DNA of 63,618 nucleotides, filler included, from Octopus bimaculoides (taxonomy: Eukaryota), in the NCBI RefSeq assembly GCF_001194135.2. It is 8 parts of 8 records of this genome, joined end to end, with 100 filler letters (N's around TTAATTAATTAA, not from the genome) between each part and the next. Parts side by side here need not be neighbours in the genome. Positions count along the whole stretch, not along the records: positions 37,617 to 52,413 come from NC_069004.1; 7 more parts are not named here. One strand, 5' to 3'. How positions within the stretch are numbered: position 1 is the first letter of the stretch; the number at the start of each line of letters is the position of its first letter. A model generated the notes under the pieces. That model was not told the origin of the DNA. It worked only from the letters and a program-made list of their open reading frames with translations, and ran no database searches. A program made the position numbers and the translations under genes. Shown here piece after piece: positions 37,517 to 50,735 of the stretch.

Positions 37517-38999
37517 NNNNNNNNNNNNNNNNNNNNNNNNNNNNNNNNNNNNNNNNNNNNTTAATTAATTAANNNNNNNNNNNNNNNNNNNNNNNNNNNN
37601 NNNNNNNNNNNNNNNNGGTATTTCTAGCAAGTCGAGTGACTACGTACATGCTACCTGCTTTACGCAACAGTTGTTTTGACGTTCCTTTTGTCGAGTCTCA
37701 ATTCATGTACAATTATTTTATTTAGCGAATTAAGTCTCGTTTTTGGTTGTTTTAATGGTGGTGGTGGTGGTGGTGGTGGTGATGGTGGTGGCGATGGTGG
37801 TGGCGGTGGTGAATAACAAAACAGCAAAGTAGGACGTAATCTTGTGACCTAAAATAGGTGTTTATATCGGTAAAAAATACATGATTACAAACAAAACACG
37901 CATACACACAACTTATATACACAACCTTAAATCGCAAAATATTCCATGCACCCTATCCTGGTCCATAGTAAGCGAGGCTACCCCATACAATGCAAACATT
38001 TGAAAATGTAAGTTATGTCTAAAAGAATCATTAATTATACTTAGCCTTCATAAATTCTCATTATTTAATAGATTCTCTGATGTAATTTATTCTTGTAAAC
38101 ATAGGTACTACTCATCTTTCATGCACCTTGCTAAATCAATGAAATCCCATAACTTCAAGTATCCATACCCAAAATGACCTTAAACAAAGTCAGCCAAGCA
38201 ATCTACTACTTAAAAAAAATACTACACCCCTCTTATTCTTTCCCATACACACATTTCCAAATTCTTCCAAATTCTTCTAATCCACTACTTTCCACTTCCC
38301 TCTTAGCCTCCCCACCCTTCCCACTTTCAAAAAGTACTTAACACTACTCCACTCCTTTGAAAACTACCCCCCACCCTCGTAAACATAAGGACACAGGAAA
38401 TGTGTCAAGGCCGACAGGAAGCGGTGCAGCTTCCTAATGCTAAATAGCAGTAGTATGATTCCCTTATTGGGACTGTCACGTTAAGTTGACAGTATACAAC
38501 TACTTTATCGTATCACTACTGCTTAAGTCTCTCTGAGAGATTTAGAAATGTATCATTTCTAATTTATATATATATACTTAATCGATTCNNNNNNNNNNNN
38601 NNNNNNNNNNNNNNNNNNNNNNNNNNNNNNNNNNNNNNNNNNNNNNNNNNNNNNNNNNNNNNNNNNNNNNNNNNNNNNNNNNNNNNNNNNNNNNNNNNNN
38701 NNNNNNNNNNNNNNNNNNNNNNNNNNNNNNNNNNNNNNNNNNNNNNNNNNNNNNNNNNNNNNNNNNNNNNNNNNNNNNNNNNNNNNNNNNNNNNNNNNNN
38801 NNNNNNNNNNNNNNNNNNNNNNNNNNNNNNNNNNNNNNNAAATTCCCTAATACAGGAAGTACAATTTTCTACTGCATTTTGGATTATCACACACACTTTA
38901 TTACAGATTAAAATTCCATCCATTTTTAACGATTTTTCTTTTACTTTTTGCTATGTTTGAAAGAATCGCTGAACTGATACTATAAACCACAAAAAAATA

Positions 39000-39256
39000 A
39001 AATAAATGCGCCCTTTTAAAGCCTAGCCAAGCTCATGGGCCCGGTTTCCCGGTTTCAATGGCGTATGTGTTCCCCAGCTGGACGGGATGCCAGTCCATCG
39101 CAGCGTTAATCATTTTTTGCCAGCTGAGTGGACTGGAGCAACGTGAAATGAAGTGTTTTGCTCAAGAACACAACGCGTCTCCCGGTCCAGGAATTGAAAC
39201 CACACTCTTACGATCATGGTGCTGACACCCTACCCACTAGGCCACGCGCCTCCACT
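39000..39256 (-). mobile_element. tRNA-derived SINE with the family D core but a different 3' tail
   Basis: Minus strand reads GGAGGCGCGTGGCCTAGTGG...TCTTGAGCAAAACACTTCATTTCACGTTGCTCCAGTCCACTCAGCTGGC, then GCGATGGACTGGCATCCCGTCCAGC...TTTAAAAGGGCGCATTTATT. Confidence 0.7.
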
Positions 39257-39470
39257 CTATAAATCACAAAACCATATCTACTTTAATTCTTTTACGTTCG
39301 TAGTTCGAATGTAGTCGAGGGCGACTTTCTGTTTCATTTCTCTGGAGTTGTTATAAGTACCAGTCATGTACTGGTATTCACTTACTCAATTAATATTCTC
39401 CCCTACAGGAAGAAATTGCTTAATTTCTTACATGCGAATTAATAATTCTTATAACAATTTTGTTTTTCAG

Positions 39471-39557
39471 GTTTGATGGTCACGTTTTCAATTCTTGGCA
39501 ATGGGTTAATATTCGTTTTGGGAGGCTTTATTAGCCAAATTCCTGTGGATCTTGAAG
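39471..39557 (+). CDS. SLCO: Internal exon of an SLCO/OATP organic anion transporter (87 nt, phase 1-1)
   Basis: Acceptor tgtttttcag and donor G|gtaaga. Translation (G)LMVTFSILGNGLIFVLGGFISQIPVDLE resembles the OATP segment G-x-x-x-x-x-x-x-x-G-P-x-x-G-x-x-L-G-G-x-x-x-x-x-Y-V-D. Confidence 0.75.
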
Positions 39558-39774
39558 GTAAGAACTATTCACTTCCACAAGGTTCTGACTTTTAGACTGT
39601 TTCTTTATTCTTTCTTTCTGATATATAACATCTTTTCTCATTCTACATTCCTCTTCGTCTACCTCCGTCTATCCAGCTTATCTAATTATCATACATACTT
39701 TGTCTATCTGTTGTCTACCGTCCTATATATTTATCTACCTACATATCAATCAATCAATCAATCAATCAATTATT

Positions 39775-39832
<58 letters not shown>

Positions 39833-39848
39833 TATGTATGTATGTATG

Positions 39849-40567
39849 TAGGGTGTTCGGACATGGTTTGACAATTTTTATGTCCACCTTATTTTTCAGA
39901 AACAGCTTGATGTATAGTTAGCGGCGTTGGAGAGCATAACGATTAAAGTTGTTGAGACAATTTAGCAGACATGGAGAACCGGCGACCATCTGAATATTGG
40001 CAAAGAGTTGTCTATATCACGATGAATCGCGCCGAGTATCATAGCGCTGACATCATGATTTCTGCTCAATGCTCTGCGAACACTACAAAGGCTGTAAGAC
40101 GTGACGTGGACCGTTGCAACGGAGATTACGAAGTCCTGACCAACAGGAAGAGACACAGCCTTCTGACTGCGTCCACACGCAGGAACTCATCCCCTCATCC
40201 TAGAATGGGGCCTCGGGCTCAATTCAAGCCGCTGTGTGAAGCTGTTGGAGACAGTGTTCAAACCCTGTCTGGAGAGGGTTATTGCTGGAAGGTCCTATGT
40301 GTGGCAGCAGGATCCGGATCCCTGCCATACCTGGTTGGCGGAGAATTCCTACGTCTTTACCAGCCCCAGGTTCTGTCTTCCTAATTTCTCCGATTGTAAT
40401 CCCATGAGTTAATACGTGCGAGGTGCAGTTGAGAAAGACACCAACCACTTTGCCAGTAACACCAAGTCCGAGCTGATGGTCAAGATCAAGGAGGTGTTCG
40501 AAGATCTTCCCAGAGACGCAATTGTTTCGGCACATCTAGCATCGATTCCTCTTGGGGGGACACTCAA
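39849..40567 (+). mobile_element. Internally deleted Tc1/mariner-superfamily (DD37D/maT-like) transposase relic
   Basis: Begins TA-GGGTGTTCGG. An N-terminal piece (MENRRPSEY...RKRHS) is joined directly to the C-terminal KLLETVFKPCLERVIAGRSYVWQQD...WLAEN...PNFSDCNPM...GAVEK (~GRPYVFQQD...WPPNSPDLNPLD). Stops and frameshifts are present. Confidence 0.7.
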
Positions 40568-41391
40568 NNNNNNNNNNNNNNNNNNNNNNNNNNNNNNNNN
40601 NNNNNNNNNNNNNNNNNNNNNNNNNNNNNNNNNNNNNNNNNNNNNNNNNNNNNNNNNNNNNNNNNNNNNNNNNNNNNNNNNNNNNNNNNNNNNNNNNNNN
40701 NNNNNNNNNNNNNNNNNNNNNNNNNNNNNNNNNNNNNNNNNNNNNNNNNNNNNNNNNNNNNNNNNNNNNNNNNNNNNNNNNNNNNNNNNNNNNNNNNNNN
40801 NNNNNNNNNNNNNNNNNNNNNNNNNNNNNNNNNNNNNNNNNNNNNNNNNNNNNNNNNNNNNNNNNNNNNNNNNNNNNNNNNNNNNNNNNNNNNNNNNNNN
40901 NNNNNNNNNNNNNNNNNNNNNNNNNNNNNNNNNNNNNNNNNNNNNNNNNNNNNNNNNNNNNNNNNNNNNNNNNNNNNNNNNNNNNNNNNNNNNNNNNNNN
41001 NNNNNNNNNNNNNNNNNNNNNNNNNNNNNNNNNNNNNNNNNNNNNNNNNNNNNNNNNNNNNNNNNNNNNNNNNNNNNNNNNNNNNNNNNNNNNNNNNNNN
41101 NNNNNNNNNNNNNNNNNNNNNNNNNNNNNNNNNNNNNNNNNNNNNNNNNNNNNNNNNNNNNNNNNNNNNNNNNNNNNNNNNNNNNNNNNNNNNNNNNNNN
41201 NNNNNNNNNNNNNNNNNNNNNNNNNNNNNNNNNNNNNNNNNNNNNNNNNNNNNNNNNNNNNNNNNNNNNNNNNNNNNNNNNNNNNNNNNNNNNNNNNNNN
41301 NNNNNNNNNNNNNNNNNNNNNNNNNNNNNNNNNNNNNNNNNNNNNNNNNNNNNNNNNNNNNNNNNNNNNNNNNNNNNNNNNNNNNNNNNNN

Positions 41392-41550
41392 CGCTGAAAA
41401 TTTCAGACCTAGAATTTATTAGAGAGTTAGGGATCTCAAATTTGAAGATAATCTGCATTCTTTCAGCTAAACAAGACCTCCAGTTATTCGGTCCATTAAC
41501 ATACGGTATGGATTTCTCAATTATTTTCCACTTAGTCACATTTGCTGCCA
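41392..41550 (-). mobile_element. Penelope-like element, C-terminal (GIY-YIG-associated) fragment
   Basis: TKWKIIEKSIPYVNGPNNWRSCLAERMQII...LINSRSEIFS (~IKWKI...PY-x-NG-x-x-x-C-x-LCL-x-EK...LN-x-RSE). Same family as 57724-57978. Confidence 0.7.
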
Positions 41551-42187
41551 CACCTTAGCCTATATCAGTACACACACACACACACACAGGACGGGCTTCT
41601 TTCAATTTCCGTTTACCAAATCTGCTCACAAGGCTTTGGTCGGTCCAAGGCTATAGAAGACCCTCGCCTAAGGCGCCATGCAGTGTGACTGAACTCGGAG
41701 CCATGTCGTTGGGAAGCAAACTTCTTACCACACTGCCACGCCTGCGCCTATATCAGTACACACACACACAGAGGCACACACACACACACCTGTCTGTTTT
41801 TCTATTATACCATCTATTTTTGTAACTATATATCTATTTGCTTATCTACTACTGCATGTTTTTTTTAATTTTTGTTATTAACCTATTAATCTGTACATCT
41901 GTCTATCTCTATGTCTACACATGTCTACCTGCTTATCTATTTGTCTGTTTATCTCTCTATTGTCTTTGTTTCTGAACCAGTTTGTATTTTCCTCGACTGT
42001 ACACAACGACATGCAGCATATTCATAAAATACGCTCCGTCACGTAACTGTTTTGTGTTTCGTATGGAATAATCTCTAAAGCTCTGAAATCCCTTTGGTTG
42101 ATATTAAATATTATTGTTGAGCACTTTGCATAGTTTTATCTCATTTTCGGTAAATTAACATATGTTCTGTGGAATAAGTGTGTGAGT

Positions 42188-42219
<32 letters not shown>

Positions 42220-43330
42220 AGAAGAGAGAGAGAGTGAACATGTGTGTGACTGAATATGTGTGTGTACTTGTGTGAGTGATTGAAAGAGTGTATATATGTG
42301 CGTGTGTACGTGTGTATGTATGTGTATGAGTATATGTATACGTGTATGTATGTGTGTATGTGTTTATGTGTGCGTATGTGTACATATGTGTATGTATGTG
42401 TGTTATTTCTTTACTACCTACAAGGGGCTACACACAGAGGGGACAAACAAGGACAGACAAACGGATTAAGTCGATTGTATCAACCACCAGTGCGTAACTG
42501 GTACTTATTTAATCGACCCCGAAAGGATGAAAGGCGAAGTCGACCTCGGCGGAATTTGAACTCAGAACGTAACGGCAGACGAAATACCGCTAAGCATTTC
42601 GCTCGGCGTGCTAACGTTTCATATTTCTTCATTGCCCACAAGGGGCTAAACATAGAGGGGACAATNNNNNNNNNNNNNNNNNNNNNNNNNNNNNNNNNNN
42701 NNNNNNNNNNNNNNNNNNNNNNNNNNNNNNNNNNNNNNNNNNNNNNNNNNNNNNNNNNNNNNNNNNNNNNNNNNNNNNNNNNNNNNNNNNNNNNNNNNNN
42801 NNNNNNNNNNNNNNNNNNNNNNNNNNNNNNNNNNNNNNNNNNNNNNNNNNNNNNNNNNNNNNNNNNNNNNNNNNNNNNNNNNNNNNNNNNNNNNNNNNNN
42901 NNNNNNNNNNNNNNNNNNNNNNNNNNNNNNNNNNNNNNNNNNNNNNNNNNNNNNNNNNNNNNNNNNNNNNNNNNNNNNNNNNNNNNNNNNNNNNNNNNNN
43001 NNNNNNNNNNNNNNNNNNNNNNNNNNNNNNNNNNNNNNNNNNNNNNNNNNNNNNNNNNNNNNNNNNNNNNNNNNNNNNNNNNNNNNNNNNNNNNNNNNNN
43101 NNNNNNNNNNNNNNNNNNNNNNNNNNNNNNNNNNNNNNNNNNNNNNNNNNNNNNNNNNNNNNNNNNNNNNNNNNNNNNNNNNNNNNNNNNNNNNNNNNNN
43201 NNNNNNNNNNNNNNNNNNNNNNNNNNNNNNNNNNNNNNNNNNNNNNNNNNNNNNNNNNNNNNNNNNNNNNNNNNNNNNNNNNNNNNNNNNNNNNNNNNAA
43301 TAATATATTTATATTTTTAATTAAACACGC

Positions 43331-43361
<31 letters not shown>

Positions 43362-43474
43362 TGTATGTATGTATGTATGTGTACATGTATGTATGCATTT
43401 ATGTATGTATGTATGTATGTATGTATGTATGTATGTATGTGTACATGTATATATGCATTTATGTATGTATGTAT

Positions 43475-43772
43475 GTATCCTTAAATCGCAGCCTTGGTTT
43501 CTGCCGGAGTCTCCTTCTATGCACAAGTTCTCCATATAGTATCTGCTTAGGAATCCTGCTATCCTTCATTCTAATAAGGCCTGTGATATGCAGGACACTG
43601 ACTGGGAGAACAATCCCTATCATCGCCACGGATGGAGGAAGCAGGTTAAAGAGGGGATCGACACTTTCGAGAGAGCACGTATCCAGCATGAAGAACTTAA
43701 GCGAGCTGCGCGAAAGCGCACGGCTCGTATAGTGAATGGGGAACGTTTGGTCTGCCATGTTAGAGGTCGTGT
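43475..43772 (+). mobile_element. RTE/BovB-like LINE 3' fragment with a 5' inversion
   Basis: 43475-43581 encodes GLIRMKDSRIPKQILYGEL...KPRLRFKDT on the minus strand. 43582-43772 encodes the next RTE segment, CDMQDTDWEN...WRKQVKEGIDTFE...KRAARK...VC, on the plus strand. Confidence 0.8.
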
Positions 43773-43773
43773 A

Positions 43774-44370
43774 TATCACCCATATCATAAGCAGTTGTCC
43801 AAAGTAATTATCGCAGTATTATCTACCGATGAGACATGATGTTGTAACTAGGACACTGTATAATGAGATCTGTTAGGTGGATAACCTTGAAGTCCAAGAA
43901 ACAGCCTACATATGGCAGAAAGAGTACCGGTGGAATGTCCCAGCGAAAACCTCAATAAAATGGAAATATAATAGGCCAGACATAGCGATTTGGGACAGGG
44001 ATGAGAAATTGTGTACAATAGTGGAAATTAGCTGCCCAGCTAATTTAACATAAAACTTAAAGATAGCGAAAAAGAAAAAACCTATGCCAAACTATTGAGA
44101 AATTTACAGTTACTCTACGCGGATTCAGGTTTATACCTGTAATTATTGGGGCACTGACATATTTAGCAAACTGTTTAAGCACCAGTCTTGAGAAATTAGG
44201 CTTCTCAAAACCAGAAAGAGAAGATTGATTTGAAGACTACAGATCCAAGCCATCACTGGAAGTGTAAAAATTTGTAAAACTTTCCGGAAACCTACCATTT
44301 AAGAATATATGTGCATGTCTAGACATGTAATTATATGCATGAGAATACATACATAAAACAAAACATACAA
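43774..44370 (+). mobile_element. 3' end of a restriction-like-endonuclease LINE (R4/Dong/NeSL type), degenerate
   Basis: ITHIISSCPK...YYLPMRHDVV...NRPDIAIWDRDEKLCTIVEISCP...KEKTYAKL...FIPVIIGALT...LEKLG: the end of a CCHC knuckle plus the RHD, PD and D/E-x-K RLE motifs. Confidence 0.8.
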
Positions 44371-44435
44371 ATCTCCACGTGCACTAGCTCGAACTACAGC
44401 ATGCGCGCGCTCGCAAAACTACACTGTGAATGTTA
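44370..44435 (+). promoter_or_regulatory. Candidate promoter elements upstream of the PDE ORF
   Basis: CpG-rich patch with CACGTG (E-box), GCATGCGCGCGC (NRF1-like) and two AACTACA motifs, about 0.6 kb upstream of the ATG. Motif match only. Confidence 0.25.
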
Positions 44436-45044
44436 GTGAAATTTCAATAAAAGAGCGTTGGATTTGGTAATTGTTTTACATTTAAATAAATATTTGGTGA
44501 TATGTTGAACTGGTTGAAGCGATATAGCACCAAACTAGATTCATTAAACATGGGTTTTAAACTTAAGGAAAGGAAAATACATCAAGATACCGGCGGTGAA
44601 GTTCCAGAAACTGTTGAGAATTGAATCAAATCCCAGCAATAATGTAGTGACGTTTTTCGTAGAGTTCGATTCGAGTCAGCATCAACTGTATCTTCGATCT
44701 GGTCATTATCAACAACACAGAACAGAATATGATTCAGTGTGAGGAACGTTTTGCCTTAGACCAATAAAACTAAAGGCAAAATATGCAGGTGTGTCATGCG
44801 CAACTCGATCGTTTGACGATTTTGAATATTTTGTCATAATTTTACTTACGTCACAACAGATTATACAGCGTGATTTCGAAGAGAAGCCACGAAAGCATGT
44901 CTGCCGACTGCTTCTAATTTCAAGTAGCGAAGACTGCTGGATTAAGAAAGAAAAAGAAAAAGAAATACGAAATTTTCATGAAACGTTTCCTAGAATACAG
45001 TAGGCTTCACTGAACATTGTTTGAAAATTAAACTTTAAAGAAAC

Positions 45045-47966
45045 ATGGGAACAGAACTTACTGAGGAAGAAGTGGATGGGTTCTTGATGGAGAATCCAAG
45101 ATTCGTTAGATCATGGCTCGCTGAACATGATCTAGGTAAATTGGGTGAACATTTATTCTTTAAACATGAGATACGAGAAGAAAAAGCACATGCTTTCATA
45201 GATTTCATAGGAAACGCCTTGTCTCGAAGGAAACCGACTCAAAAAGAGGAGAACGAAACTCTTACGGAAAATGAATTGTATAAAGAAGTTGGGAAAATTC
45301 TTAACAGCGAGCTTCATACAGATTCTCTATGCCATAGAGTTCTTCAGAAATTATGTACCTTACTTCGATGTGAAAAAGCAAGTCTTTTTTTGGCTCGAGG
45401 AGCGGGAAAAACTCAATATCTAATCTCGACCCTGTTTGATGTTACATCTGAATCTACTCTTGAAGAATCACTTCATACTGAAGAAAACGCCATACGCGTT
45501 CCCTTCGGAAAAGGTATTTCAGGATATGTAGCTCAGAGTAAGTGTTTACTAAATATTAAGGATGCATATCAGGATCCTCGTTTCTTATCTGATGTCGACG
45601 AAAAAACTGGATTTCGCACCAAAAGCATTCTATGTATGCCAATTCTAGACAGTGGTGATAATTTGTTAGCTGTCGCTCAAGTAATGAACAAAATAAATGA
45701 GGAATATTTTAATTCAGAAGACGAAAATATCTTCGAGAGGTTTTTGTCATTTTGTTCCATCAGTATGAACAACAGTGCTTTCTTTGAAAATTCTCTTGAA
45801 GAGCATGAGCGTCACAAGTTATTACTAAAACTAAATCGATGTATACTAAAATATCAAAATTCTCTAAAGAAACTAATGTCCGAAATTACCAAACTTGCCA
45901 TGGAAATGTTACAGTGTGAGAGTATCAGCATTTATTTGAGTGATCCGAAAAAGGATAACCTTTGCCCAACTGAATCTTCGAAAGTCTTTCAATTATTGAA
46001 AAGCGCTTCAGATATCTCAGAAGAAATTATAACACCGAACGTAAGAAAAGCAATTGAACGAAATATGAATAGTCAAAATATTTTAGATGTGTTTAATTCG
46101 GAGGAATTTACAGAGCATGATAGCATACATCTCGAAAGTAAGGTTGCAAGTTGGTTGCTTTGTTTAGCAATTAAAGATGCGAGCAATAATTTTGTCGGTT
46201 GGATCGTGTACATCAGAGATTCCAGAGATATTTTTAGTCGAAATGATATCAACATGATGGAAATATTTGCAATGTTCTGCGGTTTAGCTATCTATAATTG
46301 CCGTCTTTATGAAACTGCGGCAAAAACGCTAAGTCAGTTAGAATTTACAAACAGTGTGCTTAGCTATCATGCTACTTGTTATCCAGAAATTGTAGATCGT
46401 TTTTTAAATATGGAAATAGAATCTGTAAATAATTCTCAAATTTATCGATTCGACTTCAATGACTTCTTATATTCAGAGGATGACACTGTTTTGGTGGCTG
46501 TTAGCATATTTTTAGAGGCCAAAACATTATCCGTTCTCAACATATCTAAAGAATTATTATATAAGTGGATACTAACTGTTAAAAAGAACTATCGACCTGT
46601 CATCTATCATAATTGGCGTCATGCTATCAATGTCACTCAAATGATGTTTTGTATGTTGACTACTGGCAAATTGCAAATATATTTCACAGAATTTGATCGG
46701 ATTTGCCTATTGGTAGCTTCTTTGTGTCATGATCTTGATCATAGAGGATATAATAATTCATTTCAAGTGAAGACGAGATCTCCTCTTGCTCTTCTTTACA
46801 GTACGTCTGTGATGGAATACCATCATATAAGTCGATGCCTCATGATCTTAAAATATGAAGGCACAAATATTTTTCGAAACATCTCAGTTGAAAAATATCA
46901 GCAGGGGCTTATGTTTATAGAGAAAGCAATCCTTGCTACGGACCTCCTAATGTATTTTGAGAAAAGATACCTTTTCAAACAGAAAATAGAAATCGACGAC
47001 CAAACGTTGTCATCTCAAGAAAGTATTGATTTACTAATGTGCATGATGATGACTGCAGCTGATCTTTCAGCTATTACTAAGCCATGGGATATTCAAAGAA
47101 AGACTGCTATTATACTTGCAGCTGAATTCTTCGAACAAGGCGATCTGGAGAGCCATTTTACATATAATGTCATGCCTATGATGGATCGCAAAAAAAGACA
47201 CCAATTACCTAAAACGCAAGTTGGTTTTATTGATTTCGTGTGTTCAATGGTTTATAGACTTCTTTCTCAAGTGAGTAAGGAATTGCAACCTCTTTACGAT
47301 GGGATGCTCGGAAACAGAACTCATTGGTCTGATATTGTAGAAGGCAAAGAAGAATTTGATATTGATAGAGAGATCGAATTAGTTATAAATAACATTTCGC
47401 TGGAAAGTGCTATAGCAATCGCAAACAAACAATCACAACAAACGCTACGGTCACTTGACGTCGTGGAAGAAGGAGGAGAAGAGGAACAAAAACAAGAGGA
47501 AGAGGAAGAAGAACGAAAGCAAGAAGAAGAACAACAACAACAGCAAGGAGAAGAAGAAACGACTATTTTAACTGAAAAACGTGCCACATTTGGTCAAAAG
47601 GATATTCAGACTGATATTACAATTCCAACGTATATTGATCAACAGCACATTCTCTCGTCTTTTACGACAAAAACCGTTGAAACAAAAACCACAGCGAGTC
47701 AAACGGAAAATCTACTTCAAGACGTGTGTTCGGCGATGGTACAGACAGACGATTCATCTTTGAAGGAAGCAAAACATGTCACAGTTTTATTGCCTCACGA
47801 AAATCTGGTGCTTACATTGGGAGCATCCGGTAGCAAATTCATTACACTGCAAAAAGGAACTTTACCGCGAATATCCCATTGTGGTTATCATTATCATCAT
47901 TATTCAGAAAGAGGTTTACCAACAACACCCACCTCCGGTGGAAATGACCAAAATAGACAGTACTAG
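45045..47966 (+). CDS. PDE5A-like: Single-exon dual-GAF cyclic nucleotide phosphodiesterase (PDE5/PDE6/PDE11 group, closest to PDE5), 973 aa
   Basis: Uninterrupted ORF with Kozak context AAACATGG and an in-frame TAA at 45036-45038. GAF-A (about aa 91-243) has VPFGKGISGYVA, DPRF, TKSILCMPI and NKINEEYFNSEDE. The catalytic domain has YHNWRHA (46605), HDLDHRG, EYHH, AILATDL, DLSAITKPW, EFFEQGD and QVGFID. DLSAITKPW-x-IQ and QVGFID are PDE5-like. Confidence 0.95.
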   Translation: MGTELTEEEVDGFLMENPRFVRSWLAEHDLGKLGEHLFFKHEIREEKAHAFIDFIGNALSRRKPTQKEENETLTENELYKEVGKILNSELHTDSLCHRVLQKLCTLLRCEKASLFLARGAGKTQYLISTLFDVTSESTLEESLHTEENAIRVPFGKGISGYVAQSKCLLNIKDAYQDPRFLSDVDEKTGFRTKSILCMPILDSGDNLLAVAQVMNKINEEYFNSEDENIFERFLSFCSISMNNSAFFENSLEEHERHKLLLKLNRCILKYQNSLKKLMSEITKLAMEMLQCESISIYLSDPKKDNLCPTESSKVFQLLKSASDISEEIITPNVRKAIERNMNSQNILDVFNSEEFTEHDSIHLESKVASWLLCLAIKDASNNFVGWIVYIRDSRDIFSRNDINMMEIFAMFCGLAIYNCRLYETAAKTLSQLEFTNSVLSYHATCYPEIVDRFLNMEIESVNNSQIYRFDFNDFLYSEDDTVLVAVSIFLEAKTLSVLNISKELLYKWILTVKKNYRPVIYHNWRHAINVTQMMFCMLTTGKLQIYFTEFDRICLLVASLCHDLDHRGYNNSFQVKTRSPLALLYSTSVMEYHHISRCLMILKYEGTNIFRNISVEKYQQGLMFIEKAILATDLLMYFEKRYLFKQKIEIDDQTLSSQESIDLLMCMMMTAADLSAITKPWDIQRKTAIILAAEFFEQGDLESHFTYNVMPMMDRKKRHQLPKTQVGFIDFVCSMVYRLLSQVSKELQPLYDGMLGNRTHWSDIVEGKEEFDIDREIELVINNISLESAIAIANKQSQQTLRSLDVVEEGGEEEQKQEEEEEERKQEEEQQQQQGEEETTILTEKRATFGQKDIQTDITIPTYIDQQHILSSFTTKTVETKTTASQTENLLQDVCSAMVQTDDSSLKEAKHVTVLLPHENLVLTLGASGSKFITLQKGTLPRISHCGYHYHHYSERGLPTTPTSGGNDQNRQY

Positions 47967-47972
47967 AAAGAT

Positions 47973-47978
47973 AATAAA
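47973..47978 (+). terminator. Candidate polyadenylation signal of the PDE gene
   Basis: AATAAA begins 7 nt after the TAG stop, followed by T/GT-rich sequence. Confidence 0.5.
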
Positions 47979-48003
47979 GTATATATAAACGTTTATTGGT
48001 CCA

Positions 48004-48080
<77 letters not shown>

Positions 48081-48899
48081 NNNNNNNNNNNNNNNNNNNN
48101 NNNNNNNNNNNNNNNNNNNNNNNNNNNNNNNNNNNNNNNNNNNNNNNNNNNNNNNNNNNNNNNNNNNNNNNNNNNNNNNNNNNNNNNNNNNNNNNNNNNN
48201 NNNNNNNNNNNNNNNNNNNNNNNNNNNNNNNNNNNNNNNNNNNNNNNNNNNNNNNNNNNNNNNNNNNNNNNNNNNNNNNNNNNNNNNNNNNNNNNNNNNN
48301 NNNNNNNNNNNNNNNNNNNNNNNNNNNNNNNNNNNNNNNNNNNNNNNNNNNNNNNNNNNNNNNNNNNNNNNNNNNNNNNNNNNNNNNNNNNNNNNNNNNN
48401 NNNNNNNNNNNNNNNNNNNNNNNNNNNNNNNNNNNNNNNNNNNNNNNNNNNNNNNNNNNNNNNNNNNNNNNNNNNNNNNNNNNNNNNNNNNNNNNNNNNN
48501 NNNNNNATATATATATATATATATATATATATAAACATATACATGATGTTAAAATTTACAGTGAACATGGGTATACATATACATACATTAATTACGATGT
48601 GATATAATGTATATTCGCGCGCGCGCGCATACAGATATATGAAAGGTATAACACAAAAGAGAAATAACAAAACTAAATAGATGACGTAGTCCACTTGCCT
48701 TACACGCATTATTCATACTGATACACATACATATACACACACACATTAACACGCTGAATTGTTATGTAATGATCGTGTGGGGTGCATCCATTGATAAAGC
48801 CCGTGAATTTCCATCCTTAAGTTATAATTATTATATAAATGTAAATGTAAATGTATATATATATTTCATTCTTTTATTATCTTTGTTTTCTTCCTGCAG

Positions 48900-49064
48900 A
48901 ATTACCTTCGTCACTGAAAGGCCTTGTGACCAATCCAATCTTCGTTCTCATAGTAATCGGAGATTGTATTCTAGTGTTTTGTTTCAATGGCTTGTGGTCG
49001 TTCTCGGCAAAATATTTCGAGCACCAATTCTTCCTTCCTGTCTGGAAAACCAACTATATTTTAG
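48900..49064 (+). CDS. SLCO: Internal exon of an SLCO/OATP organic anion transporter (165 nt, phase 1-1)
   Basis: Acceptor ttttcttcctgcag and donor G|gtaaat. Translation (E)LPSSLKGLVTNPIFVLIVIGDCILVFCFNGLWSFSAKYFEHQFFLPVWKTNYILG matches the OATP pattern LP-x-x-LK-x-L-x-x-NP...F-x-x-KY-x-E-x-QF...N-x-x-x-G. Confidence 0.85.
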
Positions 49065-49132
49065 GTAAATATTGCGACTTTATTCATCGATATTGGAATA
49101 CTCTTAACGCGTGTGTGTGTTTGCGTTGTATG

Positions 49133-49177
<45 letters not shown>

Positions 49178-49180
49178 CCG

Positions 49181-49239
<59 letters not shown>

Positions 49240-49499
49240 GTGTGTGTGAACCAAGTATTACTAATTAAAATGAAATTCACAGCCTTTCACAAAAACTACG
49301 AAGTGCTAATAAATGACTTATAAAAAATGCACATGGAATATCCAAACAAAGGATCGATAAAAAATGGGATCATATTTTAAATAGGGCCAATCCAAAAGAA
49401 CAAGATTTCAAATACCAGAAAAACTTGATAAAGTATAATATTACAACGATCTAGATCCAGTGATGTTACTGCATCCTCGTTACCTGTTGTTTGTAATGT

Positions 49500-50735
49500 T
49501 GATGCTGCTGGTGTACCCAGCCAGCTCCTTGTCACCCCCATCTCTGTCTCCTTCATCTTTTTGACTCTCCGGTGGAGAGCTTACACGCTCCTTCCTCTTC
49601 CTCCTATTTACGACGGTGAATGTTTCTTATTCTCTCTCCACCACTTCTACATTCTGTCTTTGTTCTTCACACTACTGCCTCTGCTCCTCTCTGTCCTCCT
49701 TCTGGGGGCACCTTGCTTTCATGTACCCTTTTTGGCCGCATAGGAAACAGGTTGGAGGTCTGCCTTCCACCACAACTCTTAGTCTCACATCTTCCGGTAA
49801 AATAATCTCCTCTGTGATCTAATGCTAGCCTCTAAGGCTCACTTGTATGGCCACCTCAAGGCCATAACTCCACCAGTTAACTTTTTTGGTTCTTTTGATC
49901 TTCAATATTTTGGTTTCGTCTTCTATTCTGTGCATAACTGCTGTTACCAGCCATACTTCCTTAATTTCGAGGGGTATTCTGCCAATTCTTACTCTAGCCA
50001 CACGTTTGCCACAGTAAGTCGGCAGGAGTACGCAATCCTGTGTCTTTATCGCCACAATGGAGTGGTTTATGGTGTCCTCTCCGTTCCCGAACCTAATCTC
50101 CACTGTTCCATACTTCCTTCCTCGCGTGTAGAAGGTGGTCAGCTTCTTTATATCTTCGAGGCATTCCTCTGTTGCCTCTATTGAGGCAATCTCTATCTTT
50201 TTATAAGACGTGGATAGCGTTCTGTGTACCACTGTCCTCTTTGCTACATAGTTGATTAGTTCCTCTGGTGGGGTTAGCTTCAAACTGGCTCCTTCACTTT
50301 CTATCACTTTACTGCATTCTTTACATTTTCTGGGCTCTGTCTTGACCTCTCGCACTCCCAGGGTGTTGGTATTCAAACCTTTTGTTAGTTGTAGCTGATG
50401 CAAAAACTGGCAGCTGGTTCCTGTTTCATCTCGCCTCTCTTCTGTACTTCACCCATAAATGGGGAAGAAAACAATTACAAAAACAGGCGAAAACAGCGGC
50501 AATAATTTTAAAAAATTCAACAAATTCAACAAATCCAGGTTCACCCACACGGGCAGACCTTCCACAATACACTATAACACCAACTACTTCCATGGAATCA
50601 CAAGGACTTCAACCAGAAAAAAACACCACACTGTGCACCAAAAGTGAATGAAAACGCAACTCTGAAGAACACCATGACGAAATTCACTACAAGAACTGTC
50701 AAAGAAGTGGAGCTTCTTCGATTACACAAACGTAG
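49500..50735 (-). mobile_element. LINE ORF1 (RRM-like region plus gag-type zinc knuckle), degenerate
   Basis: Minus-strand ORF 49825-50403 (...RVARVRIGRIPLEIKEVWL...) is followed after a frameshift by LRVVVEGRPPTCFLCGQKGYMKARCP (C-x2-C-x4-[H>Y]-x4-C) at about 49709-49750. Confidence 0.7.

What the first reader, a model, noticed from the sequence alone, without database searches (positions are those of the whole stretch)
47370..47966. PDE C-terminal tail: acidic E/Q spacer followed by three LC8 (DYNLL)-type QT motifs
Seen: after the catalytic domain comes a ~200-aa low-complexity tail with EEGGEEEQKQEEEEERKQEEEQQQQQGEEE (47466-47559), then GQKDIQTD (47592-47615), KTTASQTE (47685-47708) and SAMVQTD (47730-47750). 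Known: the LC8 hub protein binds short QT-anchored motifs (TQT and variants such as IQT, VQT and SQT followed by D/E), often multivalently in disordered regions. Canonical PDE5 and PDE11 have no such tail. Inference: this PDE may be dimer-clamped or tethered by LC8 to dynein or axonemal structures, giving a localised cGMP sink, for example in sperm flagella. I do not know of this architecture being described.
Basis: partly seen in the sequence, partly recalled or inferred. Interest (0 to 1): 0.72.

Follow-up and report, generated by a model that had tools for sequence, protein, structure and literature searches.

The report
Octopus PDE tail with QT motifs
The flagged stretch is the floppy tail of an octopus-only, intron-free copy of a cGMP-degrading enzyme; its short "QT" motifs recur across the sister copies and resemble docking sites for the dimer-clamping protein LC8, but this copy holds the most eroded set and binding is untested.

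Summary
Window 45045-47966 (+) is one uninterrupted 973-codon ORF encoding a GAF-GAF-PDE of the PDE5/6/11 clade, in Octopus bimaculoides. Residues 775-973 form a tail with no relative among solved structures. AlphaFold2 predicts it as disordered. It holds a (GAA)n-derived E/Q insertion and the motifs GQKDIQTD, KTTASQTE and CSAMVQTD at the stated coordinates.

The tail is not unique to this gene. It is homologous to the proximal half of the tails of a family of single-exon octopus paralogues. Those tails carry 2-5 xQT motifs each, with none in their ~760-aa bodies. The three closest hold four at conserved spacing, mostly canonical TQT. All end in a CAAX prenylation box.

This copy has lost the Q of motif 1. 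Motifs 2 and 4 read I and V where the close paralogues have T. It lacks the distal tail and the CAAX box, and it evolves fast (dN/dS 0.47).

The motifs fit validated LC8 anchors. In my re-implementation of an LC8 matrix, two score in the binder range and one in the non-binder range. So LC8 clamping of the PDE dimer's tails is a reasonable family-level hypothesis (about 0.35-0.4). It is weaker for this copy, and nothing supports dynein or sperm tethering. The orthologous tail could not be retrieved.

The parts
45045..47966 (+). Complete single-exon CDS (973 codons plus stop) of a GAF-GAF-PDE, PDE5/6/11 clade
   Evidence: The ORF is listed. The annotated gene equals the ORF on O. bimaculoides CM046624.1:11,083,999-11,086,920. 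The best solved relative is PDE5A. dN/dS against the O. sinensis orthologue is 0.47, bootstrap CI 0.36-0.64.
45321..45764 (+). GAF-A (residues 93-240), with the NK...F...DE signature residues present
   Evidence: Pfam GAF has E 4.5e-24. N215, F222 and D226 are invariant and K216 is nearly invariant in alignment A2.
45861..46292 (+). GAF-B (residues 273-416)
   Evidence: It is the second GAF stretch, with a weak GAF_3 match. AF2 models a GAF-like alpha/beta fold there at pLDDT 70-88.
46605..47303 (+). PDEase_I catalytic domain (residues 521-753), metal-binding residues intact
   Evidence: Pfam gives E 8.7e-79. H522 N523 W524 H526, H562 D563 D565 H566, D633 and D673 are invariant in A2, and Q725 is nearly invariant.
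47367..47963 (+). C-terminal tail (residues 775-973): short conserved helices 775-805, then a disordered region
   Evidence: No PDB match lies beyond residue 774-775. pLDDT is 24-30 for 828-973. tblastn homology to the P0003/P0004 tails has E 1.6e-23 and 4.3e-18. All indels against the paralogues are multiples of 3. P(no stop) is about 0.005 under neutral drift at 0.2 substitutions per site.
47466..47558 (+). E/Q-rich insertion (residues 808-838), a degenerate (GAA)n/(CAA)n trinucleotide array
   Evidence: TRF reports period 3, 30 copies, 75% matches. It is absent from P0003, P0004, P0005, P0006 and the 1033-aa paralogue and from P0121 and the 1060-aa paralogue.
47556..47573 (+). Remnant of family motif 1 (ETTILT where paralogues have STQTILT); the Q codon is missing
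   Evidence: See the protein and DNA alignments. The window reads ACG ACT ATT TTA where P0003 reads ACC CAA ACT ATT TTA.
47592..47615 (+). QT motif 2, GQKDIQTD (paralogues: KQMDTQTD, EQKVTQTD)
   Evidence: Alignment is. The matrix score is 1.2, in the non-binder range. Q at -4 is unseen in the 79 binders. RSP3's RHIDIQTD and Snph's QERAIQTD are validated IQTD binders.
47685..47708 (+). QT motif 3, KTTASQTE (paralogues: KTVDSQTE, KTADSQTE, TKNCQTDE, KEKSCQTD). A motif at this position is found in five of the seven paralogues
   Evidence: Alignments are. The matrix score is 13.7, within the binder interquartile range.
47727..47750 (+). QT motif 4, CSAMVQTD (paralogues: SSALTQTE, FSAITQTE, SEVSVQTY), always 14 residues after motif 3
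   Evidence: The matrix score is 10.2, at the lower quartile of binders and above the upper quartile of non-binders.
47889..47966 (+). Poorly homologous C-terminal end, including a short ATC/ATT simple repeat (YHYHHY), plus the stop codon. The ORF stops where paralogues continue with RRTSW, about 190 more residues and a polybasic-CAAX end
   Evidence: The tblastn match to P0003 ends at 47888. No blastn homology to paralogue 3' CDS is found here.
48008..48506 (.). (TG)36 microsatellite followed by an assembly gap (N run 48081-48506) directly 3' of the stop. This limits certainty about the true 3' end
   Evidence: No paralogue-like distal tail or CAAX coding sequence is found anywhere in 37617-52413.

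Best explanation
What is shown. The region encodes the translated, intrinsically disordered C-terminal tail of a fast-evolving, single-exon, octopus-lineage paralogue of the invertebrate PDE5/6-type cGMP phosphodiesterase. Its QT motifs are inherited from the ancestor of this gene family. In the three closest paralogues the proximal tail carries an array of four xQT motifs: [SA]TQT, x[TI]QT, [SC]QT[DE] and [TV]QT. Their spacing is conserved at 13-16, 30-35 and 14 residues. A polybasic-CAAX membrane anchor lies at the far end.

What is inferred. The array is a set of short linear motifs, and its most likely reader is the LC8/DYNLL dimer. PDE5/6/11 enzymes are parallel homodimers (family knowledge). 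Each LC8 dimer could therefore bind the same motif on both tails and zip them into a short ladder, as documented for RSP3, Nup159 and ASCIZ. That ladder would stiffen the link between the catalytic domains and the membrane anchor.

This copy is a decayed derivative:
- Motif 1 is destroyed.
- Motifs 2 and 4 weakened from T to I and V.
- A (GAA)n insertion has been acquired.
- The distal tail with the RRTS site and the CAAX box is missing.

The protein is probably soluble. At best it binds LC8 weakly and through avidity, via motifs 3, 4 and perhaps 2.
For: The gene is real and under constraint:
- The domains and catalytic residues are intact.
- dN/dS is 0.47, CI 0.36-0.64, against O. sinensis over 729 codons.

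The tail is translated:
- 199 codons are open and every indel against the paralogues is in frame.
- P(no stop) is about 0.005 under neutral drift at 0.2 substitutions per site.
- Tail dN/dS against P0003 is 0.66, CI 0.46-0.94.

The tail is disordered:
- pLDDT is 24-30 with no secondary structure here.
- The QT region of P0003 behaves the same.

The motif array is a family feature:
- Seven octopus paralogues have no xQT in their ~760-aa bodies and 2-5 in their tails.
- The counts exceed shuffles: P0121 has 5 against 0.53, P0005 has 4 against 0.36, P0003 has 4 against 0.85.
- Spacing is conserved in the window gene, P0003, P0004 and P0121.
- Non-cephalopod homologues have almost none; only two sequences, one xQT each, in the 45 rows printed.
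- The tail profile finds only this family among 1.84 billion representatives.

Fit to LC8:
- The residues seen at -1 (T, S, I, V, C) are those the RSP3 paper lists as tolerated replacements (PMC3392930).
- D or E at +2 is the commonest choice in binders, 37 of 79.
- KTTASQTE scores 13.7 and CSAMVQTD 10.2. Binders have median 12.4 (IQR 9.8-14.6) and non-binders median 6.0 (IQR 3.3-9.1); leave-one-out AUROC is 0.84.
- Q and T are kept while -1 varies, which argues for a QT-anchored motif rather than an [ST]Q site.
Against: - There is no binding data of any kind.
- Many TQT peptides do not bind LC8: 17 of the 32 non-binders are TQT.
- My matrix is a re-implementation, not LC8Pred itself. It has a small training set, and paralogue motifs score only 1.7-13.9.
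- GQKDIQTD scores 1.2.
- Motif 1 in the paralogues is followed by hydrophobic residues (ILTF, LFTF, VLTY). These are disfavoured at +2 for LC8.
- The tail of P0003 against P0004 evolves at dN/dS 0.98, CI 0.67-1.40. Conservation between close species therefore says little.
- The paralogues are not independent samples.
- The orthologue's tail was not obtainable (two searches returned nothing).
- No expression evidence could be examined.
Confidence: 0.4

Rival explanations
1. Inert low-complexity tail. The QT motifs are leftovers of shared ancestry plus Q/T-rich composition, in a tail that drifts almost neutrally. They have no partner, and the tail serves at most as a flexible linker to the CAAX anchor, which this copy has lost.
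For: - The tail dN/dS between P0003 and P0004 is 0.98.
- The window tail is 9.8% Q and 10.7% T, so plain QT dipeptides are not enriched: 4 observed against 2.24 expected.
- The tail contains two simple-repeat insertions.
- This copy has lost motif 1 and the CAAX end without losing its ORF.
- Many TQT peptides do not bind LC8.
Against: - xQT recurs 2-5 times in every paralogue tail, including tails that otherwise cannot be aligned (P0005, P0006, P0121, the 1060-aa copy).
- It never occurs in the bodies.
- Spacing is conserved.
- [TSIVMC]QT[DEP] is about 20-fold over the shuffle expectation.
Confidence: 0.35
2. The motifs are phosphorylation sites rather than docking sites. They would form an SQ/TQ cluster for ATM/ATR/DNA-PK-type kinases, or CK2-type [ST]xx[DE] sites (TQTD, SQTE), that regulate the PDE.
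For: - P0003 and P0004 have four [ST]Q within about 60 residues. From general knowledge, that meets the usual definition of an SQ/TQ cluster.
- T/S-Q-T-D/E also fits the CK2 pattern S/T-x-x-D/E.
- The paralogues also carry an RRTS site further on.
Against: - In the window gene, P0121, P0005 and the 1060-aa copy, the residue before Q is I, V or C. That removes the phospho-acceptor while Q and T are kept.
- The conserved core is therefore QT, not [ST]Q.
- From general knowledge, a cytosolic or membrane-bound PDE is an unlikely substrate of DNA-damage kinases.
Confidence: 0.1
3. The QT segments are beta-strand elements that fold back on the catalytic or GAF domains, or bind another partner such as a PDE6-gamma-like inhibitor or a prenyl-binding chaperone. 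They would act as an autoregulatory tail.
For: - Conservation in motifs 1 and 2 extends C-terminally into alternating hydrophobic residues: TQTILTF, TQTDISIP, IQTILSYP.
- That extends beyond the eight residues (-5 to +2) that define the LC8 motif.
Against: - AF2 predicts no structure or docking for these segments in either the window protein or P0003, with pLDDT 23-34. The alignment over the tail is shallow, so this is weak evidence.
- There is no Pfam or PDB similarity.
Confidence: 0.1

Closest known systems
Vertebrate PDE5A, and PDE6 and PDE11A (GAF-GAF-catalytic cGMP phosphodiesterases)
   Same: It has the same domain order. It aligns to PDE5A over residues 81-774 (E 3.8e-142) and to PDE6 subunits. 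It is 36-37% identical to PDE11A. The metal-binding and glutamine-switch residues are conserved.
   Different: PDE5A ends within about 10 residues of the aligned region, whereas this protein continues for 199 residues. The octopus gene is a single exon. From general knowledge, vertebrate PDE5/6/11 genes are multi-exon; this was not tested here.
Invertebrate PDE5/6-like enzymes with a prenylated C-terminus (Drosophila Pde6/CG8279 type; mollusc, cnidarian and insect 'cGMP-specific PDE-like' proteins)
   Same: They are the best non-octopus hits, at 38-43% identity. They have a tail beyond the catalytic domain. The octopus paralogues P0003-P0006 and P0121 share their CAAX ending.
   Different: The window protein has no CAAX box; it ends NDQNRQY. 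The non-cephalopod tails are shorter, 41-178 aa, and lack xQT arrays. Prenylation of Drosophila Pde6 is recalled from the literature, not tested here.
Multivalent LC8/DYNLL clients: Chlamydomonas RSP3, Nup159, ASCIZ/ATMIN, Chica/FAM83D, Bassoon, GKAP, 53BP1
   Same: Several TQT-like motifs lie in a disordered region of a protein that is itself dimeric. The spacing here, 14-31 residues, compares with 17-31 aa in RSP3. Position -1 is replaceable by S, I, V or C. RSP3's RHIDIQTD resembles GQKDIQTD.
   Different: There is no experimental binding for the octopus proteins. The anchors in this copy are all non-canonical. No cyclic-nucleotide PDE is among the 79 training binders or in the literature searched.
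nNOS-LC8 (PIN) interaction
   Same: It is an enzyme of the NO/cGMP pathway that binds LC8 through a non-TQT anchor, KDTGIQVD. It is a conceptual precedent for LC8 acting on this pathway.
   Different: It is a different enzyme with a single site and an IQV anchor. There is no homology.

Membership tests
Class I cyclic-nucleotide phosphodiesterase, PDE5/6/11 clade | PDEase_I catalytic domain with the HNWRH and HDxDHRG metal-binding motifs and the invariant substrate glutamine | tested here: met
   Pfam PF00233 has E 8.7e-79. H522 N523 W524 H526, H562 D563 D565 H566 R567 G568, D633 and D673 are invariant, and Q725 is nearly invariant, in a 32-sequence alignment.
Class I cyclic-nucleotide phosphodiesterase, PDE5/6/11 clade | Tandem N-terminal GAF-A/GAF-B domains, with GAF-A carrying the NKFDE-type cGMP-binding signature | tested here: met
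   There are two GAF stretches. N215, K216, F222 and D226 are conserved. AF2 models GAF folds. cGMP binding itself was not tested.
Invertebrate prenylated PDE5/6-like subgroup | C-terminal CAAX box, often preceded by basic residues | tested here: not met
   The window protein ends ...GGNDQNRQY*. All six other paralogues examined and most non-cephalopod homologues end in CxxX. No CAAX-coding homology lies downstream in the piece. Caveat: an assembly gap starts 115 bases after the stop.
LC8/DYNLL client | Eight-residue motif (-5 to +2) anchored by TQT or an accepted variant, without the disfavoured features | tested here: inconclusive
   The anchors IQT, SQT and VQT occur in 4, 4 and 3 of 79 validated binders but also in non-binders. 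Scores are 1.2, 13.7 and 10.2 against a binder IQR of 9.8-14.6 and a non-binder IQR of 3.3-9.1.
LC8/DYNLL client | The motif lies in an intrinsically disordered region | tested here: met
   AF2 pLDDT is 24-30 with no secondary structure for residues 828-973. The P0003 QT region behaves the same.
LC8/DYNLL client | Motif conserved in orthologues while the flanks diverge | tested here: inconclusive
   The motifs are conserved across paralogues in three octopus genomes. The true orthologue's tail is unavailable because the contig ends. Tail-only searches returned nothing, not even the protein itself.
LC8/DYNLL client | Direct, QT-dependent binding to LC8 | not testable with these tools
   This needs ITC, pull-down or a multimer prediction, none of which is available here.
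Retrogene (processed copy) | Intronless CDS derived from a multi-exon parent, with a poly(A) remnant and target-site duplications | tested here: inconclusive
   The CDS is intronless, as are all paralogues looked up and a Haliotis homologue. There is no poly(A) tract after the stop. DNA homology to the P0003 locus extends about 580 bp upstream of the ATG, so this copy probably arose by DNA-level duplication of an already intronless gene. No multi-exon parent was identified.

The most novel reading that the evidence does not exclude
An octopus-specific family of intronless, prenylated GAF-PDEs has evolved a conserved array of LC8-binding motifs in its disordered tail. LC8 dimers would zip the two tails of the PDE homodimer into a rigid ladder. 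That ladder would set the enzyme's distance from the membrane or dock it to LC8-rich structures such as axonemes. This would make a cyclic-nucleotide phosphodiesterase an LC8 client for the first time and, with nNOS, a second LC8-regulated node of NO/cGMP signalling. The window gene would be a CAAX-less, partly de-clamped, soluble derivative.
Probability: 0.3. Interest if true: 0.6.

Novelty: new variant of a known kind. Interest (0 to 1): 0.45.

Why it matters
If LC8 really reads these motifs, it would add a cyclic-nucleotide phosphodiesterase to the LC8 interactome. It would also give a concrete mechanism, a tail ladder on an already dimeric enzyme, for placing a cGMP sink in a lineage with an unusual expansion of intronless PDE genes.

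The family offers a natural comparison series. The paralogues have four motifs and a CAAX box. This copy has three weakened motifs and no CAAX box.

If LC8 does not bind, the finding reduces to an ordinary fast-evolving disordered tail on a lineage-specific PDE duplicate. Either way, peptide binding experiments can test the hypothesis cheaply.

Tried and rejected
- Tail-only homologue searches. An alignment query and a single-sequence query both returned nothing, not even the protein itself. The word index evidently does not cover this region, so this is not evidence of absence.
- Exhaustive HMMER search with the tail profile. It found only the window protein and one O. vulgaris paralogue, P0121. 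It found no tails from other taxa and no orthologue, because clustering at 50% identity hides close relatives.
- Search for the missing distal tail or CAAX downstream of the stop, or elsewhere in 37617-52413. None was found.
- Internal duplication as the origin of the motif pairs. There is no significant self-similarity: P = 0.04, 0.30 and 0.76 in three paralogues. Rejected.
- A fold-back structured element. AF2 gives no structure for the QT region in two proteins.
- Literature. No paper combines DYNLL1, phosphodiesterase and TQT, and none combines octopus, phosphodiesterase and intronless. The ten papers holding LC8, cGMP, phosphodiesterase and 'dynein light chain' show no PDE-LC8 link in their titles or abstracts. 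Only the Tetrahymena radial-spoke paper was opened. It lists a PDE among RS3-associated enzymes, and the passages read do not link it to LC8.
- Confirming that relatives are multi-exon. The look-up for oyster P0008 failed, and the Haliotis homologue turned out to be single-exon too. The 'octopus retrogene' idea was therefore left open.
Full report
**What is there**

The piece holds one uninterrupted ORF, 45045-47966 (+), of 973 codons. Pfam finds two GAF stretches and a PDEase_I domain at residues 521-753 (E 8.7e-79).

The identical protein is annotated as a single-exon gene on Octopus bimaculoides chromosome CM046624.1:11,083,999-11,086,920. The best solved relative is human PDE5A, which aligns to query residues 81-774 and to chain residues 157-869 of 878. 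PDE6 subunits follow. Nothing in the PDB matches residues 775-973.

The catalytic metal ligands, the substrate glutamine and the GAF-A signature residues are conserved in a 32-sequence alignment.

Against the O. sinensis orthologue (84% identity, 729 codons, collinear with about 1.3 kb of upstream DNA), dN/dS is 0.47, with a bootstrap interval of 0.36-0.64. The gene is therefore constrained but fast-evolving.

**Check of the observation**

| Feature | Residues | Window coordinates |
|---|---|---|
| E/Q stretch | 808-838 | 47466-47558 |
| GQKDIQTD | 850-857 | 47592-47615 |
| KTTASQTE | 881-888 | 47685-47708 |
| (C)SAMVQTD | 895-902 | 47727-47750 |

- TRF calls it a degenerate (GAA)30 array.
- The pattern [TSIVMC]QT[DEP] occurs three times against 0.14 expected, and none of 4000 shuffles reached three. 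The looser [TSIVMC]QT gives P = 0.024.
- These figures are optimistic, because the pattern was chosen after seeing the data.

**The tail is coding and disordered**

- All indels between this tail and those of the paralogues P0003 and P0004 are multiples of three.
- A neutral simulation gives about 0.005 for keeping 190 codons free of stops at 0.2 substitutions per site.
- Tail dN/dS against P0003 is 0.66, interval 0.46-0.94.
- AlphaFold2 with the family alignment gives pLDDT 24-30 and no secondary structure for residues 828-973. The acidic insertion is a low-confidence helix.

**The decisive context: a gene family**

The protein is one member of an octopus family of single-exon GAF-PDEs.

- P0003 (O. 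bimaculoides, 67% identity) lies 640 kb away, next to another copy of 1060 aa.
- O. vulgaris has at least five copies within 90 kb: P0004, P0005, a 1033-aa copy close to P0006, and two 1135-aa genes, of which P0121 is that type.
- All of these end in a CAAX box: CMIS, CMIF, CTIS, CKIS, CVIS, CVVC. So do most mollusc, cnidarian and insect homologues.
- The window protein does not. It ends NDQNRQY*, at the point where P0003 and P0004 continue with RRTSW, about 190 more residues and a polybasic-CAAX end.
- No homologous continuation exists downstream in the piece.
- A (TG)36 repeat and an assembly gap at 48081-48506 follow the stop.

**The QT motifs are inherited**

In the tail alignment, P0003 and P0004 carry four motifs. 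In P0003 these are KGISTQTI, KQMDTQTD, KTVDSQTE and SSALTQTE.

| Protein | Q positions |
|---|---|
| P0003 | 810, 823, 853, 867 |
| P0004 | 808, 821, 851, 865 |
| P0121 | 810, 826, 861, 875 |
| Window protein | motif 1 absent, 855, 886, 900 |

The window positions match P0003 and P0004 once about 35 inserted residues (chiefly the 31-residue E/Q stretch) are subtracted.

- More distant paralogues, whose tails otherwise cannot be aligned, still keep [SC]TQT, SSQT or TSQT, IQT and CQTD.
- Across seven paralogues there is no xQT in the ~760-residue bodies and 2-5 in each tail. The excess is clearest in P0121 (5 against 0.53 expected), P0005 (4 against 0.36) and P0003 (4 against 0.85).
- Non-cephalopod homologues have practically none.
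- A profile of the tail finds only this family among 1.84 billion representative proteins.

In the window copy:

- Motif 1 has lost its Q codon. The window reads ACG ACT ATT TTA where P0003 reads ACC CAA ACT ATT TTA.
- Motifs 2 and 4 have I and V where the close paralogues have T.

This gene therefore holds the most eroded version of the array.

**Fit to LC8**

I took the 79 binders and 32 non-binders of Jespersen et al. 2019 (PMC6607443, Table S4). From them I rebuilt a two-matrix score following their supplement.

- Leave-one-out AUROC is 0.84.
- Binders have median 12.4 (IQR 9.8-14.6). Non-binders have median 6.0 (IQR 3.3-9.1).

| Motif | Score | Reading |
|---|---|---|
| KTTASQTE | 13.7 | binder range |
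| CSAMVQTD | 10.2 | borderline |
| GQKDIQTD | 1.2 | non-binder range |

- The low score of GQKDIQTD mainly reflects Q at -4, which never occurs in the binders.
- Paralogue motifs score from 1.7 to 13.9.
- The anchors IQT, SQT and VQT occur in 4, 4 and 3 validated binders. IQT and SQT also occur in 3 and 4 non-binders.
- D or E at +2 is the commonest choice in binders, 37 of 79.
[quoted passage not shown] It describes five motifs 17-31 residues apart on a homodimer, bound by a cooperative stack of LC8 dimers (PMC3392930). The same replacements and similar spacing are seen here.
- Many TQT peptides do not bind LC8.
- Motif 1 of the paralogues is followed by hydrophobic residues, which are disfavoured at +2.
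- This is my own re-implementation of the score, not LC8Pred itself.

**Mechanism proposed, and what is inferred**

Shown:
- The tail is translated and predicted to be disordered.
- The xQT array is family-wide, tail-restricted and conserved in spacing.
- This copy lacks motif 1 and the CAAX end.

Inferred:
- The array is a set of short linear motifs whose most likely reader is LC8.
- PDE5/6/11 enzymes are parallel homodimers (family knowledge). LC8 dimers could therefore bind both tails in register and zip them together.
- In the paralogues that ladder would sit between the catalytic domains and the prenylated end.
- The window protein would be a soluble derivative with weakened LC8 binding that depends on avidity.

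I put the LC8 reading at about 0.4 for the family and lower for this copy. Nothing supports tethering to dynein, axonemes or sperm. The only literature link found is a PDE listed among radial-spoke-3-associated enzymes in Tetrahymena, which the passages read do not link to LC8.

**Rivals**

- **Inert, drifting tail.** The tail of P0003 against P0004 has dN/dS 0.98, and simple repeats invade the tail. However, recurrence, restriction to the tail and conserved spacing argue against pure chance.
- **Phosphorylation sites** (SQ/TQ cluster or CK2). The conserved core is QT, while the would-be acceptor at -1 becomes I, V or C in several copies.
- **A fold-back or other-partner element.** AF2 shows no structure in the QT region of either protein, but the alignment there is shallow.
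- **Internal duplication of motif pairs.** Not supported.

**Limits**

- The orthologous tail could not be obtained. The O. sinensis contig ends at residue 729, and the tail-only word-index searches failed even to find the protein itself.
- No expression data could be consulted.
- The paralogues are not independent observations.

**Novelty and score**

The gene is a new member of a known enzyme clade. The tail array is a lineage-specific variant that I could not find described. As a hypothesis it is testable and moderately interesting. As evidence it is still only sequence-level, and this window's copy is the weakest example of it. Interest: 0.45.

Noticed in passing
window 48899-49069 (+); gene models ending about 39595 and starting about 51718: The PDE gene is nested, on the same strand, inside an SLCO/OATP transporter gene. 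An OATP exon (Pfam profile positions 281-337, E 3e-10) lies about 930 bp after the PDE stop. The annotation has an N-terminal-half OATP model upstream and a C-terminal-half model (OATP plus Kazal_2) downstream. This is probably one gene, split in the annotation around the nested PDE.
   Followed up: partly
L002 1-3175 and 10001-13276; L004 3197-6298, 10001-13411 and 22597 onward; L005 499-3906 and 10001-13327: All the octopus GAF-PDE paralogues looked up are single-exon genes arranged in tandem clusters, with at least five copies within 90 kb on O. vulgaris OX597837.1. This is a lineage-specific expansion of intronless PDE5/6-like genes that I could not find described.
   Followed up: partly
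L006 501-3155 (Haliotis rufescens JALGQA010000083.1): The abalone homologue P0019 (884 aa, ending in the CAAX box CVIM) is also encoded by a single exon. Intronless PDE5/6-like genes are therefore not confined to octopus. Whether the origin is shared or independent is unknown.
   Followed up: no
window 44465-47429 compared with 47595-47814: Nucleotide identity to the P0003 locus is about 85% from about 580 bp upstream of the ATG to 47429. It then drops abruptly to 67% in the tail. dS is 0.27 in the body and 0.70 in the tail. This suggests gene conversion of the gene body between paralogues, or a chimeric origin.
   Followed up: partly
P0003 residues about 925-953; P0004 equivalent: The paralogues carry a conserved RRTSW (a PKA/PKG-type site), followed by the only helix AF2 predicts in the tail (933-953, pLDDT 52-62). 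The window ORF stops exactly before this element.
   Followed up: no
window 47883-47905 and 48008-48080: Simple repeats lie in and next to the 3' end of the CDS. An ATC/ATT run encodes YHYHHY, and a perfect (TG)36 lies 42 bases after the stop and abuts the assembly gap at 48081-48506. An AATAAA lies at 47973.
   Followed up: partly
window 41570-42620 and 52092-52413: Dispersed repeats are shared with the O. sinensis and O. vulgaris loci, including tandem units of about 76 and about 185 bp in L001. The segment 52092-52413 is 94-95% identical to two places in L002. These are probably transposable-element or satellite sequences.
   Followed up: no
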